Positions 11,089-16,859 of a stretch of DNA of 54,021 bases are shown one piece after another (the first letter of the stretch is position 1; each line of letters begins with the position of its first letter). This DNA comes from Salisapilia sapeloensis CBS 127946 (taxonomy: Eukaryota > Protista > Oomycota): NCBI GenBank assembly GCA_023334545.1, contig JAADVB010000117.1, positions 1-54,021 on the forward strand. The letters are read 5' to 3'. A program made the translations under genes and the position numbers. Under the pieces are notes generated by a model that saw only the letters and a list, made by a program, of their open reading frames with translations, was not told the origin of the DNA and ran no database searches.

Positions 11089-13152
11089 TCAACAGTAGGC
11101 TTTGGCAAGCCGGCTATCCGATTTACCAGAAGAAACGTCGTCCCCAAGATACAGAGCTTTATCCCAGCCTGCTTCCAGAACATTCATCCCCCATGGGTCG
11201 ATTCTAGTATCCACAAACAAATTAATACGATATAATCTATAAACCTAGTGAGTCGAAGCACCACTAAAACATACATTGCGCTGTCCTCGCTCTTCGTGTT
11301 CATGGGTACGTAAACCTTATCGCTGTTAAGATAGTTGCCGTCGACATTGCTATTCCAAGTAAATATATTCCAATTAGTATATGCGTGGAGCATTGCAATC
11401 GACTAGCTTCTTTCATACAGATACTCTAGGCACAGCGTCTCCGGATAGGTCCAGCGAAGATACATTTTGATTTGTTTACCATCCTCATCCTTGTCGAGAT
11501 TAAAGGACAAATCCCTACGCAAAGGATGTCAAATTGTTCTAGGGTTACGAGAAGGCACGCAAGACTTACAAATACTTTAGCCTCGGCAGCTTAATCTTGT
11601 AATGTGACGAAAACGACAAGAACCCATCCCTCGCTTTACGTCTCGGTTTCGGCTGAAATCTGTTTTTAACGAGCTTGTTGTGCTTGAGATACCTACAGCG
11701 TACAAAGTGTTCACGTGGAGCACCATTTATAAGCACAAGATCTTCCTTATATTATTTAACACGATGTCATACATTTTTTCGATCACTGGAACCCACGCGC
11801 CAACAAAAGTTAAACGATTGTGCTCCATATACCTACATCCGATGTATCCGATTTTAGAATAAAAATAGATTGTCAGCCGAGGTATACGTACACTTCCCTC
11901 AGGTTTAACCAAGAGCCATCCCACGAGTCTAATGCCGCGTGATCTGCGAAACTGTCGTACGTTCAGGATGCGAGTTTCTTAGATTGGAAATTCAATTGTT
12001 ACCACGTACAGTATTGTAACCGAGCCGAGCACATGAGCTTGTGGATTATCAATCTTTTCGATGATGTTATAGCTTAAATCGCTATTGAAGCCATTCAGTC
12101 TCATGCTTCAATAAATGCAGATCAGTACATACACAGTTTCGAGGCTTGAACACTTTCCTCCGTGCAAACTGTCCTTGGTCAACTTATTTCTCGAAAGATC
12201 CCTGTCATCGACATTTATAAACTCTAAAAAGCTAAAAGTCTTGCAGAATGTGTCTTACAAATGCGCAAGTTTTGTCTCGGCGCAATCAAAATCTGTGAGC
12301 TGATTATCTCGAAGACTCCTATTTTGTGCGTAGTGAATTAGCTATACGGCAATAGGGCTTACTGCATGTGTCTTACGCTGTCCTGGCCTTAGGTATCTTT
12401 GCTTCGAACGTATGAAGTTTGTTCTCTGCCAAGTCCCTGCGTTGGTACAAACTGTAAGTTAATGCCGTAAATCGACAGTAATAAAAGACTTACAATTGTC
12501 GTAGTTGTTCCCAATTGCCAGTGATACTGCCCAATGAAGACGTATTGACTTGGCTAGAGTTTGTGTTTGCAATATTAATATTCGACCATCAAGATTGTAG
12601 TGTCAGTAGAAATACATACAGTTTTCGAATATTCGGAAAGTTTGCTCCATCAAGGCTCTCGATCGACGTACTGGCCATGTATCTAGTGACATCCGCTCTA
12701 TAGTAAGTATCTTGCTTCACACAACTCAAGATCATATCAGACGTACAGCTCTTCCAGCTTTGGAAACTTTCCAGACATCTCTTGAAGTGGGACATTCTTA
12801 AGAACACTGCATTCGCTCAATCAGTCAAGCTTTAGTCCCTGATAAATAATGAAAGTCGCTGTACAGAGTTTTTATGTGCTGAAATTGGGCTCCATCAAGC
12901 TTTTTCATTTTGTTTCCACTCAAGTCGCTACGATCAGAAATTAGTAGAGTATTCATTAGCAAAATGTTTATTCACCTACATTTTTTCCAAGTCGTAAGGA
13001 AAAGATATAGCGGACAACATTTTATCATCAAGCTCCTTATGGGCAAACTCATCATACGAATAGTCGTAGGCTTCTGGTGCCAAAGCTTGCCACATAGCGA
13101 CAATGAGGAAGAGCAGCATGGCTTGCACACTCCGGCGCTTCATCCAAATCAT
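11089..13152 (-). CDS. LRR gene A: predicted secreted LRR protein, 15 exons, about 402 aa if it ends at TGA 11089-11091
   Basis: Manually spliced exons: 12980..13152, 12865..12927, 12747..12806, 12620..12682, 12494..12553, 12377..12436, 12259..12318, 12133..12201, 12010..12081, 11892..11951, 11773..11832, 11570..11692, 11419..11514, 11275..11349, 11089..11203. All 14 introns are GT-AG and phase 2, and the spliced frame stays open. It has a signal-peptide-like start (MIWMKRRSVQAMLLFLIVAMWQALA) and repeats such as DLSGNKMKKL, DLAENKLHTF, SLRDNQLTDF, DLSRNKLT and DLSYNII. The true 3' end is uncertain. Confidence 0.85.
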
Positions 13153-13201
13153 GGTTTGCAGAGTGGAAGTAAAATGAAATGTGAAAGCATATACTATCCG
13201 G
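13153..13201 (-). promoter_or_regulatory. Putative core promoter of LRR gene A (oomycete initiator-like TCAYTYY, pyrimidine-rich)
   Basis: The minus strand reads CCGGATAG...TTTCACATTTCATTTTACTTCCACTCTGCAAACC-ATG. TCATTTT fits the oomycete initiator consensus, and the stretch is homologous to the upstream region of gene B. Confidence 0.45.
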
Positions 13202-14400: not shown

Positions 14401-14445
14401 CCGGATAGCCTAGGACTTCACTTTTGATTCTACTTCTACATTGCA
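14401..14445 (+). promoter_or_regulatory. Putative core promoter of LRR gene B (initiator-like TCACTTT)
   Basis: CCGGATAGCCTAGGACTTCACTTTTGATTCTACTTCTACATTGCA-ATG, which mirrors the gene A upstream sequence. Confidence 0.45.
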
Positions 14446-16859
14446 ATGACAACTATAATGAAGCATATTATCCGACATGTTCTCCCCCCTCTCATCCTCC
14501 TGAGCGTGTTGACTGGCACGCATGCCAACAACATTAACCTATTTCGCACCCCGTATCGGAAGAGAGGCATTGACGACATTCATCTTTCAAACTTAACCTT
14601 TTCATACGACATGGAGCATATGTAGATAAACATATAAAACGCCAGTAGAACATAATACTAACTTTTCTCTCACTGTAGTGACCTGAGACAGAACAAGATC
14701 ACAAAGCTTCATGCATACCAATTCCCACACGTCAAAATCCTGTACGGATATTGATATCGTAATAAATTACGCACATCTAGACTTATTTGATGCATGCAGT
14801 GACCTCGCCTGGAACCCTATCGAAGAAGTGACCGGAACGTTTTCAAACCTAGAGGAGCTGTACGTCTGATTGGGTTATGTCCAATGTGAAGTTCTGCACA
14901 AACTAAATTTTGATGCTACTAGGGATGTCAGCTCCTCGAGATTAAAAGTACTGGATGCAGCAAACTTTCCCAACCTTCACACAATGTAAAGCTTTATAAC
15001 TACGACCCTAGTTAGTCTATCACGTATTGACCCCTTAGCATGCATATATTAGCAATTGTAGTCATGGAAGTCTCCAGGAAATTCGTGGTAAATGGAGAAA
15101 CCTTAATAGCGCGTATGTACTATTATTTGCAGTACCATTGGTGTTCATTATTCGAAATACATACGAACAAGGCTTCTAAGGTTTCTCATATTTTAGTTTA
15201 TTAAGCAACAACAGCATTTCAACTTTCGACTCGGAACAATTTGGACACGCTACATCTATGTAAAGTGATTTGGTCTATATACTTAAAAGTAAGCCTTGGC
15301 TTACCGCATCCGTGTAGTCGCATTGACGCAAATCCAATCAAAACAATATTTGGAAAATTTTCAAATTTAAGAGATTTGTACGTCGGAGGTGATTATGACT
15401 AGTGCCCATACTACGCTGACTAAATGTTTCATGAAACAGGCACATGTCACGTACACTTTTCTCTGATGTGAAAGGAAAAAGTTTTCCTAACATTCGCAAG
15501 CTGTACGTATTTGTACCAACATTGTGGCGTAGATAATTTGCTATCATTTCTCTACCTTACACAAATTAGACGACTGAACGGAGGCAAATTAAAAAGAATT
15601 TCTGGCAGCTGGAACCTTCTCACCAGTTTGTAAGACTTCGACTATTGCCAGTTTACGACGGAATTTTTACTCTCTGGGTATACATAGGAATCTGGAAAGT
15701 AACCAGTTACACAGCTTTACAGCGAAGATGCCTAAGCTTCAAGAGGCGTAAGATATGGAAAGTAGGTCATTTTGCCTACGTTACTGACGCCTCATGTGTG
15801 AGCTAGGTATATTTCAAACAATAAGCTCACTGATTTTGACTGCGCCAAGATGAAGCTTCAGTACTTGTAAGGTTTATCTAATGTGTTGGGTGGCTTTGTC
15901 TAAATCTTGCAAATTTACTGCAGGGACTTGTCATCGAATTTACTGACGAAAGACAGTTTGCATGGAGATAAGTGTACAAGCCTCCAAACTGTGTACGTAC
16001 TAATGTGTTTTTCCTAGGCAGCATGGTACTAATCAGTTTGGATAGTGTTTTGAGTCGGAATAGCATTAGCACAATTGGCGATCCGCAAGCTCATACTCTC
16101 GGTTCGGTTTCAAAGCTGTACGTGACAGTACTTCAATATTTATCCTATAAAGCTCACATACTGAACGTATAACAGTGTCGCAGATCAAACGAAGTTAGAC
16201 TCATGGGATGGATCTTGGTTAAAGCTGAAGGAAGTGTGCGTATCTATTTACTACCAACGCTCCTCTTTACTCTGATATCGGATAAATTGAATGCAGATCT
16301 ATGGAAGATAATGGCATGACCGACGTTAGCGCATACATACCAGTGATCGAGAGAATGTATGACGTTATGCTAATTGACATTAAAACACTTTGTGCTAATA
16401 CATGGCACTTATCATGGACACTTTGTACATTCTAGGCAACTAAGCAACAATAAGCTGGCTGGTAGGCGATTCTATCCCAAGCCAAGGGTGAAGGAAGGAG
16501 GCTCAGGGTTTTTCTACACGAAAAAGAGCTGGTACTCGAAGCTCGCAAAATTGAAGTATCTGTAAGTAGACGTCTCAACATATTAAGTTTAAAGGCTGAA
16601 TAATGCTTCGATAACCGCATAGATATTTGAACGATAACGTAAAAAGAGATGAGAACGGCAATAAAATCAAACTGGAGATAAGGTTACGGATACCCGATTC
16701 ATGCCTAAAAGAAGTGTAAGTACCCTGTCTGTTGGTCGTGCCAGTGACATTTTGCTGCAACTGACTCACTTTCTCCACATTAGCTACCTCTTTCGCACAA
16801 AGCACGATTCAGACGATGTCATGGAACATCTCTGCTCCGATGCCGACTACGGAAAGTAG
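14446..16859 (+). CDS. LRR gene B: predicted secreted LRR protein, 18 exons, about 447 aa if it ends at TAG 16857-16859
   Basis: Manually spliced exons: 14446..14621, 14679..14741, 14800..14859, 14923..14985, 15053..15112, 15197..15259, 15318..15377, 15440..15502, 15570..15629, 15688..15747, 15807..15866, 15924..15992, 16046..16117, 16176..16235, 16297..16356, 16436..16561, 16623..16715, 16784..16859. All 17 introns are GT-AG and phase 2, with an open frame. It has a signal-peptide-like start (MTTIMKHIIRHVLPPLILLSVLTGTHA) and repeats DLRQNKITKL, DLAWNPIEEV, NLESNQLHSF, YISNNKLTDF and DLSSNLLT. A possible donor at 16856 means the gene could continue. Confidence 0.85.

What the first reader, a model, noticed from the sequence alone, without database searches (positions are those of the whole stretch)
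11089..16859. A ~5.8-kb ancient palindrome carrying a head-to-head pair of hidden secreted LRR genes
Seen in sequence: the region folds back on itself about 13798-13801. Symmetric positions sum to about 27598 (13678/13920, 13602/13996, 13569/14029, and the two start codons 13152/14446). Homology runs through the 1.3-kb intergenic region, the core promoters, exons and even some intron ends (GTACGTCTGAT after exon 3 in both genes). Neither gene shows in the ORF track because the exons are about 60 nt. Inference: one fold-back duplication produced two divergently transcribed, signal-peptide-bearing LRR paralogs sharing a mirrored bidirectional control region. They may form a co-regulated pair of extracellular recognition or effector proteins. 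I do not recognise a described oomycete locus with this combination, but cannot confirm novelty without a search.
Basis: partly seen in the sequence, partly recalled or inferred. Interest (0 to 1): 0.92.

Follow-up and report, generated by a model that had tools for sequence, protein, structure and literature searches.

The report
Mirror-image pair of secreted LRR genes
An old mirror-image duplication in an oomycete genome holds two expressed genes that point away from each other; each encodes a probably secreted leucine-rich-repeat protein built from one repeat per tiny exon, a design known from brown algae and vertebrate receptors and, as far as my literature searches went, not described in oomycetes.

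Summary
Window 11.3-16.9 kb is a diverged inverted duplication. Its axis is at 13799/13800, with no spacer (blastn E 3e-133 and 2e-104).

It holds two intact genes that point away from each other:
- Gene A (minus strand): 15 exons, 402 aa.
- Gene B (plus strand): 18 coding exons, 447 aa.

Transcript contigs from four RNA runs of another study support every splice junction. All 31 coding introns are in phase 2, and each internal exon encodes one 20-24 aa leucine-rich repeat. Each protein has one N-terminal signal-like hydrophobic stretch and no other.

The duplication is old. Synonymous sites are saturated, introns are at shuffle level, protein identity is 45% and dN/dS is about 0.15.

- The "1.3-kb intergenic region" is almost all transcribed. 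It forms two long, uATG-rich 5' leaders, and B's leader has two introns. Only about 72 bp at the centre has no RNA.
- The leaders are 71% identical (blocks over 90%), more than the introns or the first exons.

Predicted concave-face residues differ far more between A and B than the rest (27% vs 63% identity), which suggests different binding specificities.

The one-repeat-per-phase-2-exon design is known in brown-algal ROCO genes and gonadotropin receptors. Here the exon size, intron position and protein type differ.

No homologue search with the spliced proteins was possible. Unchecked scan notes report similar genes, and a second palindrome, elsewhere in this genome.

The parts
11092..13152 (-). 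Gene A coding region. 15 exons, 402 aa, 14 phase-2 introns of 51-80 nt. Signal-like N-terminus, about 13 LRR units, and a C-terminal tail of two non-LRR exons.
   Evidence: All 14 CT..AC junctions are present in the RNA contigs of X2-X4. Model and translation.
13153..13776 (-). Gene A 5' leader. About 624 nt, unspliced in all four runs, with 17 upstream ATGs. RNA ends at 13759-13776.
   Evidence: The RNA contig runs continuously from exon 1 to 13598-13602, and an overlapping contig runs from 13573 to 13759-13776. uATG list.
13777..13848 (.). Centre of the palindrome (axis 13799/13800). This is the only stretch without RNA contigs and is the presumed shared bidirectional core promoter. The innermost 45 bp or so are only about 55-60% alike.
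   Evidence: Ends of the RNA pieces in four runs. Gap-free arm alignment starting at the axis.
13849..14445 (+). Gene B 5' leader, with two GT..AG introns. Intron 14039-14119 is spliced in X3-X5 and retained in X2. Intron 14200-14281 is spliced in all runs. 10-17 upstream ATGs, depending on isoform.
   Evidence: Junctions 14037/14119 and 14197/14280. uATG list.
14446..16859 (+). Gene B coding region. 18 exons, 447 aa, 17 phase-2 introns of 53-84 nt. Signal-like N-terminus and about 17 LRR units.
   Evidence: Model. Junction 14621/14679 and exon 16436-16561 seen in RNA. The exon sum of 873 nt equals the transcript contig distance. The total of 33 junctions matches the model.
13533..13751 (-). 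Best-conserved leader block, arm A. Mirror partner: 13847-14065, 83% alike.
13847..14065 (+). Best-conserved leader block, arm B. Part of it (14036-14079) has about 3.5 times single-copy depth in the DNA run, so similar sequence exists elsewhere in the genome.
   Evidence: table 8: X1 piece 7 has depth 117 against 33.
14923..15629 (+). Stretch where B carries four more LRR exons than A (B05-B08 in a global alignment). Exon lengths alternate 63/60 nt. A exon 4 resembles B exon 4 in its first half and B exon 8 in its last seven residues.
   Evidence: Protein alignment, exon table, register shift of about 525 nt.
11570..11692 (-). Gene A exon 12. A long, basic, non-canonical unit (41 aa) that interrupts the repeats. 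It matches B exon 16 (16436-16561, 43% identity).
16436..16561 (+). Gene B exon 16, partner of A exon 12.

Best explanation
ORIGIN. An ancestral multi-exon gene for a secreted LRR-only protein was copied in inverted orientation. The breakpoint lay a few tens of bases upstream of its transcription start, which produced a palindrome without a spacer. A fold-back or template-switch mechanism is inferred, not shown.

PRESENT STATE. Both copies survived under purifying selection and are transcribed outward from a core of about 72 bp at the axis. Each mRNA starts with a long leader rich in upstream ATGs. Because the arms mirror each other, each leader also lies about 75-650 bp upstream of the partner gene's start site. 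These leader sequences are kept far more alike than neutral sequence. I read them as a shared, mirrored control module, acting as DNA elements for both genes and/or as translational or stability control through the leaders.

PROTEINS. They are read as entering the secretory pathway and forming curved LRR solenoids made of 20-24 aa units. The two copies have diverged mainly on the predicted concave binding face, so they most likely bind different extracellular partners. The ligand and the biological role (adhesion, recognition or an effector-like role) are unknown.

EXON DESIGN. Every internal exon is one repeat, is a multiple of 3 nt, and is flanked by phase-2 introns. Whole repeats can therefore be gained or lost in frame, as in the four-exon difference between A and B.

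SHOWN: the palindrome, the gene models, splicing, expression, the age of the duplication, purifying selection, leader transcription and conservation, and the concave-face divergence.
INFERRED: secretion, the binding role, the shared control module and the mechanism of origin.
For: - Palindrome.
- Splicing and expression in four RNA runs of a separate study.
- Gene models, 31 phase-2 introns and symmetric exons.
- LRR nature: the unit consensus is xLxxNxLxxhxGxFPxLxxL. A profile of 24 exons hits solved LRR proteins: designed LRR 4r58 at E 2.6e-11, then internalin B/J and repebodies.
- Signal-like N-terminus, no other hydrophobic segment, no hydrophobic tail, no RxLR near the signal peptide, no LxLFLAK motif.
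- Age and constraint: pS 0.74 (saturated), dN 0.47, dN/dS about 0.15, 43% identity at four-fold sites. Matching introns score 56-68% against a shuffle baseline of 52.5 +/- 4.5%.
- Leaders: 460 of about 650 columns identical, with 60-nt blocks at 52-55/60.
- RNA covers the region between the start codons except about 13777-13848; two plus-strand GT..AG introns lie in B's leader.
- Concave-face positions 16/60 identical against convex/loop 62/99; Fisher p = 1.7e-5.
- A:B depth ratio of 3.3-4.5 in all four runs.
- Host is an oomycete: RPC1 is 72-77% identical to every sequenced oomycete order alike.
Against: - Secretion rests on rules of thumb only. No signal-peptide predictor, no structure model and no Pfam scan could be run on the spliced proteins.
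- No homologue of the spliced proteins could be searched, so family range and conservation of the arrangement are unknown.
- The RNA data are unstranded contigs without local depth. Start sites are therefore approximate, and a second start site close to each ATG (Inr-like TCAYTYY motifs lie there) cannot be excluded.
- Ten to seventeen upstream ATGs would be expected to hinder translation of the long-leader mRNAs.
- The first leader segment of B (13849-14025) is 1.7-6 times deeper than the B body. The simple 'one promoter, one mRNA' picture does not explain this.
- Leader similarity could come from gene conversion rather than function.
- Only four runs (three samples) of one study support co-expression.
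Confidence: 0.7

Rival explanations
1. The high similarity of the central 1.3 kb has no function. Arm-to-arm gene conversion, typical of palindromes, or conversion from other family loci, homogenised the centre after the duplication.
For: - Similarity is highest near the axis and drops outward.
- Part of B's leader (14036-14079) is present about 3.5 times in the genome's DNA unitigs.
- DNA contigs branch to other sequence at 12761 and 15844, so donor copies exist.
- The peptides of the position-conserved upstream ORFs are not conserved: 6 of 14 residues differ in the best case.
Against: - The similar stretch stops exactly at both start codons. Exon 1 is 61% alike at the DNA level and 24% at the protein level.
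- Similarity is patchy: blocks at 87-92% sit next to a 120-nt stretch at about 47-63%.
- The innermost 45 bp or so, which a conversion tract across the axis should include, are the least alike.
Confidence: 0.3
2. The centre is a hairpin-RNA or small-RNA source. A transcript reads through the axis and folds into a long double-stranded stem.
For: The arms 13533-13751 and 13847-14065 could pair (83%). Rfam long-hairpin plant MIR models give sub-threshold hits on both strands (best 68 bits against a gathering score of 180).
Against: - In all four RNA runs the contigs stop at 13759-13776 and restart at 13849-13858. None crosses the axis.
- B's leader introns show plus-strand RNA running outward.
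- Each leader on its own folds no better than shuffles (z = -1.1 and 0.0).
- The Rfam hits are what any long inverted repeat gives.
Confidence: 0.05
3. The palindrome is an assembly artefact, or one of the two copies is a dead pseudogene.
For: The only DNA run that holds the region may be the sample the assembly came from.
Against: - The arms differ by 17-40%, so they cannot be collapsed or mis-joined copies.
- A short-read unitig crosses the axis.
- RNA from another study matches each arm perfectly.
- Both reading frames are open and fully spliced, and dN/dS is about 0.15.
Confidence: 0.02
4. The proteins are not secreted soluble binders. They are membrane-anchored (signal-anchor) or intracellular LRR scaffolds translated from another start codon.
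For: No predictor was run. The hydrophobic cores score only KD19 1.5-1.7. The long leaders hold many ATGs.
Against: - Every upstream ATG is followed by a stop before the main ORF, in all leader isoforms.
- Both N-termini have a charged n-region, a 12-14 residue hydrophobic core and small residues at -3/-1 (ALA|P in A, THA|N in B).
- Neither protein has a second hydrophobic segment or a hydrophobic tail.
Confidence: 0.12

Closest known systems
Brown-algal LRR-ROCO genes and LRR-only genes with 'shuffling' LRR exons (Zambounis et al. 2012; Teng et al. 2024, PMC11378527)
   Same: Also from a stramenopile. One LRR per exon, all introns in phase 2, symmetric exons that allow in-frame gain and loss of repeats, and variable residues on the concave face (one search compared).
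   Different: - Exons here are 60/63 (69, 72) nt, not a uniform 72 nt.
- The intron sits inside the LxxLxLxxN core (it splits the codon of the second L). In brown algae it lies about six residues before the core, so the introns are not at the same position.
- The proteins here have a signal peptide and no ROC-COR GTPase.
- No alternatively spliced LRR exons appear in the contigs.
- The brown-algal genes are not described as palindromic pairs.
Gonadotropin (LH/FSH) receptor genes of vertebrates
   Same: Similar-sized exons that each encode one LRR, all in phase 2. This is taken as evidence of growth by exon duplication (as cited in PMC11378527).
   Different: Those are animal G-protein-coupled receptors with a seven-helix domain. 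They are unrelated in sequence, are not secreted LRR-only proteins and are not arranged as inverted pairs.
Secreted LRR-only proteins (sLRR) of fungi and Phytophthora infestans, e.g. ZtLRR (bioRxiv 10.1101/2025.08.22.671746)
   Same: A signal peptide followed by a single LRR domain in a filamentous microbe. An oomycete example exists.
   Different: Sequence relationship was not tested. Those proteins were tested for suppression of plant immunity, whereas nothing is known here about host or function. Their gene structure and pairing were not reported in the passages read.
Head-to-head paralogue pairs from inverted duplication that share a bidirectional promoter (general genomic pattern)
   Same: Mirror arms, divergent transcription from a short shared core, and a stable expression ratio.
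   Different: There is no spacer at all. Almost the whole inter-ATG region is transcribed as two mirrored leaders, and these are better conserved than introns and first exons.

Membership tests
Leucine-rich-repeat proteins | Tandem units with the core LxxLxLxxNxL | tested here: met
   Consensus of 20 units. Alignment of 24 exons. The profile hits solved LRR proteins at E 2.6e-11 down to 1e-3.
Secreted LRR-only proteins (sLRR) | N-terminal signal peptide | tested here: inconclusive
   Only hydropathy and the -3/-1 rule were applied. No predictor is available for the spliced proteins.
Secreted LRR-only proteins (sLRR) | No other domain, membrane span or lipid anchor | tested here: met
   No second hydrophobic window and hydrophilic C-termini. 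Repeat units fill most of both proteins. A Pfam scan of the spliced proteins was not possible.
Secreted LRR-only proteins (sLRR) | Sequence or fold relationship to ZtLRR or the P. infestans sLRR; suppression of host immunity | not testable with these tools
   Their sequences are not held, and spliced queries cannot be handed to the search tools.
Brown-algal shuffling-LRR-exon genes (ROCO type) | One LRR per exon, all introns in phase 2 | tested here: met
   31 of 31 coding introns are in phase 2, and all internal exons are multiples of 3.
Brown-algal shuffling-LRR-exon genes (ROCO type) | Uniform 72-bp exons with the intron upstream of the LRR core | tested here: not met
   Exons are 60, 63, 69 or 72 nt, and the intron splits the second L of the core.
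Brown-algal shuffling-LRR-exon genes (ROCO type) | ROC-COR GTPase domains after the LRRs | tested here: not met
   The proteins end 60-110 residues after the repeats, and no further exons appear in the transcript contigs.
Brown-algal shuffling-LRR-exon genes (ROCO type) | Alternative splicing of LRR exons | tested here: inconclusive
   Exactly 33 junctions were found, all constitutive except one leader intron. Contigs drop rare isoforms.
DNA palindrome / inverted duplication | Two arms significantly alike in reverse complement about one axis | tested here: met
   E 3e-133 and 2e-104. Coordinate sums are 27598-27599. The alignment is gap-free from the axis outward.
DNA palindrome / inverted duplication | Junction confirmed by independent DNA molecules | tested here: inconclusive
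   A short-read unitig (13573-14025) crosses the axis, but the run may be the source sample. No long reads are available.
Hairpin-RNA / microRNA-like locus | A transcript through the axis; a match above the Rfam gathering score | tested here: not met
   No RNA contig crosses 13777-13848. The best Rfam score is 68 bits against 180 needed.
RxLR / Crinkler oomycete effectors | RxLR(-dEER) or LxLFLAK motif shortly after the signal peptide | tested here: not met
   None near the N-terminus. The single RxLR string in B is at residue 201, inside a repeat.

The most novel reading that the evidence does not exclude
The pair is one unit of an expanded, lineage-specific family of cassette-built secreted LRR proteins in a deep-branching oomycete. 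On this reading the family is an extracellular recognition or effector repertoire. It diversifies on the concave face and by in-frame gain and loss of single-repeat exons, and it arose independently of the brown-algal ROCO system, because the intron position differs. Its mirrored, transcribed, uATG-rich leaders would be a conserved regulatory module shared by family members, gating expression after transcription.
Probability: 0.2. Interest if true: 0.65.

Novelty: new variant of a known kind. Interest (0 to 1): 0.42.

Why it matters
- Oomycete genes are mostly poor in introns; in this window the neighbours are long single ORFs. A family with 14-17 phase-2 introns, one per repeat, is therefore a clear case of repeat growth by exon duplication. 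It parallels brown algae and vertebrate receptors but has a different intron position, which suggests the design arose more than once.
- Ordinary ORF scans miss such genes, so secretome and effector catalogues of oomycetes may undercount them.
- The pair offers a compact natural test system for two questions. How does a spacer-less palindrome become a stable bidirectional transcription unit? Why are mirrored 5' leaders kept more alike than the coding exons next to them?
- If the proteins act at a host or prey interface, their divergent concave faces mark the likely specificity surface.

Tried and rejected
HOMOLOGUE SEARCH
- The tools take only contiguous window translations, and every exon frame closes within 22-83 aa. 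Only pieces could therefore be searched.
- A profile of the two 41-aa 'island' exons was run against 1.84 billion representative proteins. It gave three spurious repeat-peptide hits. An earlier job was lost.
- The protein atlas gave nothing usable for the same exon.
- I did not type the spliced proteins into any tool, so there is no Pfam scan, structure model or family search for them.

LOOK-UPS OF NEIGHBOUR GENES
- Neighbour ORFs 19809-23504 and 40709-41965 are not on record as called genes.

SYNTENY
- The PXPH-PLD neighbour has orthologues in Pythium oligandrum and Saprolegnia parasitica. No LRR pair lies upstream of them and no other neighbour is shared. The Albugo look-up failed. This shows only that local gene order is not kept at this distance.

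OTHER CHECKS
- Other family members in the window: none. The only other LRR ORF (1101-1922) is an unrelated, intron-less RNI-like LRR_6 protein.
- RNA structure in the leaders: not better than shuffles.
- Conserved upstream-ORF peptides: positions are kept but residues are not.
- B's internal four-exon duplication: DNA similarity between B02-05 and B06-09 is at baseline. It rests only on the length pattern and on motifs.
- Literature: no oomycete report of LRR-per-exon genes or of such palindromic pairs was found.

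
Full report

The repeat finder on 9-19 kb returns six collinear inverted-repeat pairs about one axis. The best are 13533-13751/13847-14065 (83%) and 13156-13409/14193-14446 (75%). A sensitive blastn of the reverse-complemented left half against the right half gives two hits:
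- 13787-12598 against 13812-15010: 66% over 1221 nt, E 3e-133, coordinate sum 27599.
- 12887-11629 against 15237-16498: 62%, E 2e-104.

The second hit is shifted by about 525 nt, because the right-hand gene has four extra exons. Aligned from the axis outward, the arms stay in register with a single 1-nt gap over the first 240 nt, so there is no spacer.

2. BOTH GENES ARE REAL, INTACT AND EXPRESSED

Four RNA runs (X2-X5, one 2019 study) and one DNA run (X1, 2022) of the same coded organism hold the region. Laying their contigs on the stretch gave 33 junctions.

- Gene A (minus strand): 14 junctions with CT..AC ends.
- Gene B (plus strand): 17 coding junctions plus two more in its leader. Only 17 of the 33 junctions were displayed: all 14 of A, the two in B's leader and B's first coding intron.
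- From A's junctions I built a 15-exon, 402-aa model, coding 13152 down to 11092.
- Gene B was modelled from GT..AG sites as 18 coding exons and 447 aa, 14446-16859.
- B's modelled exons between 14621 and 16436 sum to 873 nt, exactly the distance in the transcript contig. The displayed pieces (14280-14621, 14679 onward, 16436-16561) have the predicted ends.
- The junction count leaves no room for exon-skipped isoforms in the contigs, although contigs drop rare forms.
- Introns are absent from the RNA contigs and the axis is uncovered, so the signal is RNA and not contaminating DNA.

3. GENE ARCHITECTURE

All 31 coding introns are in phase 2 and are 51-84 nt long. Every internal exon is a multiple of 3 nt: 60, 63, 69 or 72 nt, plus one of 123/126 and one of 93/96.

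Each short exon encodes one unit of the form xLxxNxLxxhxGxFPxLxxL. The intron splits the codon of the second L in the LxxLxLxxN core. A profile of 24 such exons finds solved LRR proteins: a designed LRR at E 2.6e-11, then internalin B/J and repebodies. The units are therefore leucine-rich repeats of the short, internalin-like length class.

Each protein begins with a charged n-region, a 12-14 residue hydrophobic core and small residues at -3/-1 (ALA|P in A, THA|N in B). Neither has another hydrophobic window, a hydrophobic tail, an RxLR motif near the N-terminus or an LxLFLAK motif. Secretion is thus inferred, not shown.

4. AGE AND SELECTION

- A and B are 45% identical over 363 aligned residues.
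- Exons are collinear: A01-05 with B01-05, and A06-14 with B10-18.
- Matching introns score 56-68%, against a shuffle baseline of 52.5 +/- 4.5%.
- Synonymous sites are saturated (pS 0.74). dN is 0.47, so dN/dS is about 0.15. Four-fold sites in identical residues are 43% alike against 25% expected.

The duplication is therefore old, at roughly one substitution per neutral site or more, and both copies are under purifying selection.

The constraint is uneven across ten matching repeats:
- Predicted concave-face variable positions: 16/60 identical.
- Convex/loop positions: 62/99 identical (Fisher p = 1.7e-5).
- Core L/N positions: 35/50 identical.

This pattern is expected if the two proteins kept the scaffold and changed what they bind.

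5. THE CENTRE IS NOT AN ORDINARY INTERGENIC REGION

RNA contigs run from A's exon 1 without a break to 13598-13602, and on to 13759-13776. On the other side they start at 13849-13858 and connect to B's first coding exon through two plus-strand GT..AG introns. Intron 14039-14119 is retained in one run. Intron 14200-14281 is removed in all runs. Contigs break only where the arms share exact 31-mers.

Only about 72 bp (13777-13848) has no RNA. The 1.3 kb between the start codons therefore consists of two mirrored 5' leaders: 624 nt in A and 434-597 nt in B. They carry 10-17 upstream ATGs, and every one is closed by a stop before the main ORF.

The leaders are 71% identical overall, with 60-nt blocks at 52-55/60. 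That is clearly above the introns and above exon 1 (61% DNA identity, 24% protein identity). The similarity ends at the two ATGs. The untranscribed innermost 45 bp or so are the least alike.

Some upstream ORFs keep their start and stop positions in both arms, but their residues are not conserved. Neither leader folds better than shuffles.

My reading is that the leaders are constrained as a shared control module, with odds of about 2:1 over gene conversion. Because of the mirror symmetry, each leader is also the upstream region of the partner gene. The conversion rival is kept because DNA unitig depth shows that at least 14036-14079 exists about 3.5 times in the genome, and DNA contigs branch to other sequence at 12761 and 15844.

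6. EXPRESSION

Contig depths for the four runs:
- Gene A: 45.5, 41.2, 68 and 27.1.
- Gene B: 11.6, 12.3, 16.7 and about 5.5-6.6.
- A:B ratio: 3.3-4.5.

The first leader segments are about equally deep on both sides (22-45 on the A side, 29-46 on the B side). The B-side segment is therefore 1.7-6 times deeper than the B body. One possible reason is a symmetric promoter followed by unequal processing or decay, but the contigs cannot show that. I list it as unexplained.

7. CONTEXT

The neighbours are long single ORFs:
- PXPH-type phospholipase D at 6848-9394.
- A WW-domain protein at 19809-23504.
- RNA polymerase III largest subunit at 32815-36963.
- A protein kinase at 40709-41965.

The polymerase is 72-77% identical to those of Peronosporales, Pythiales, Lagenidium, Albugo and Saprolegniales alike, and nothing closer is present. 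The organism is therefore an oomycete far from every sequenced genus in that database.

The LRR genes have GC3 of about 0.50, against 0.70-0.76 in the conserved neighbours. The PLD orthologues of Pythium oligandrum and Saprolegnia parasitica have no LRR pair next to them and share no other neighbours with the window. Synteny therefore says nothing about how old the arrangement is.

8. COMPARISON WITH WHAT IS KNOWN

One LRR per exon, with all introns in phase 2, is published for the LRR-ROCO and LRR-only genes of brown algae. Those authors note the same design in gonadotropin receptor genes (PMC11378527).

The present genes share that logic but fail three defining features of the brown-algal family:
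- The exons are not uniformly 72 bp.
- The intron lies at a different place in the repeat.
- There is no ROC-COR domain.

They work like that family without being a member. The different intron position argues for an independent origin of the design.

Secreted LRR-only proteins are known from fungi and from Phytophthora infestans (bioRxiv 10.1101/2025.08.22.671746). Whether the present proteins are related to them could not be tested. My literature searches found no oomycete report of such cassette genes or of a palindromic pair of them.

Unchecked first-stage notes of this scan report several more one-LRR-per-exon genes, and a second palindrome, on other pieces of the same genome. The DNA-depth evidence independently supports the existence of paralogues.

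9. LIMITS

The spliced proteins could not be given to the search, family or structure tools. Searches with pieces failed. The RNA data are unstranded contigs. Start sites, minor isoforms and local depth remain open.

10. VERDICT

This is a real and well-supported structure: an old, spacer-less inverted duplication carrying two expressed, probably secreted LRR paralogues of cassette design. The palindrome and the divergent pair are ordinary kinds of genome feature. Three points are of moderate interest: the cassette LRR architecture in an oomycete, the concave-face divergence, and the transcribed, unusually conserved mirrored leaders. They can be tested directly.

Noticed in passing
window 13849-14025: The first leader segment of gene B is 1.7-6 times deeper in RNA contigs than the body of gene B (46 vs 12, 43 vs 12, 29 vs 17, 31 vs 5.5). 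The A-side segment is at or below the level of the A body. Unexplained. It could reflect early termination, isoform loss or a separate short RNA.
   Followed up: partly
window 14036-14079; also 12724-12761 and near 15844: DNA unitigs of run X1 show about 3.5 times (14036-14079) and 2 times (12724-12761) single-copy depth, and contigs branch to other sequence at 12761 and 15844. Near-identical pieces of the B leader and of LRR exons therefore exist elsewhere in the genome.
   Followed up: no
window 13675-13922, both strands: Sub-threshold Rfam hits to plant long-hairpin microRNA families (MIR5998, MIR2630 and others; 41-68 bits against gathering scores of 83-195). They are an effect of the inverted repeat itself, not evidence for a microRNA.
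   Followed up: yes
window 1101-1922 (+): An intron-less ORF with RNI-like repeats (Pfam LRR_6 at 1.3e-09, LRR_8, LRR_4). It is unrelated to the cassette LRR genes.
   Followed up: partly
window 6848-9394 (-), probably extending to about 10.3 kb: A PXPH-type phospholipase D, about 50% identical to the PXPH-PLD of all oomycetes. The ORF lacks about 250-300 N-terminal residues present in the orthologues, so the gene continues toward the 3' end of gene A.
   Followed up: partly
window 32815-36963 (+): RNA polymerase III largest subunit. It is 72-77% identical to every oomycete order alike, with no closer relative in 5.8 billion protein clusters. The genome therefore belongs to a lineage without sequenced close relatives in that collection. 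The Pfam match starts at profile position 89, so an upstream exon is likely.
   Followed up: partly
window 10-19 kb against 7-10 kb and 33-38 kb: Composition mosaic. The LRR pair and its flanks have 38-44% G+C and GC3 of about 0.50. Conserved neighbours have 55-58% G+C and GC3 of 0.70-0.76.
   Followed up: partly
window 53536-53619 (+): A tRNA gene (Rfam RF00005, 57.7 bits).
   Followed up: no
window 12620-12682 against 14923-14985 and 15440-15502: Gene A exon 4 resembles B exon 4 in its first half and B exon 8 in its last seven residues (FPNIRKL). This would fit an in-register unequal exchange that removed, or in B added, four repeat exons.
   Followed up: partly
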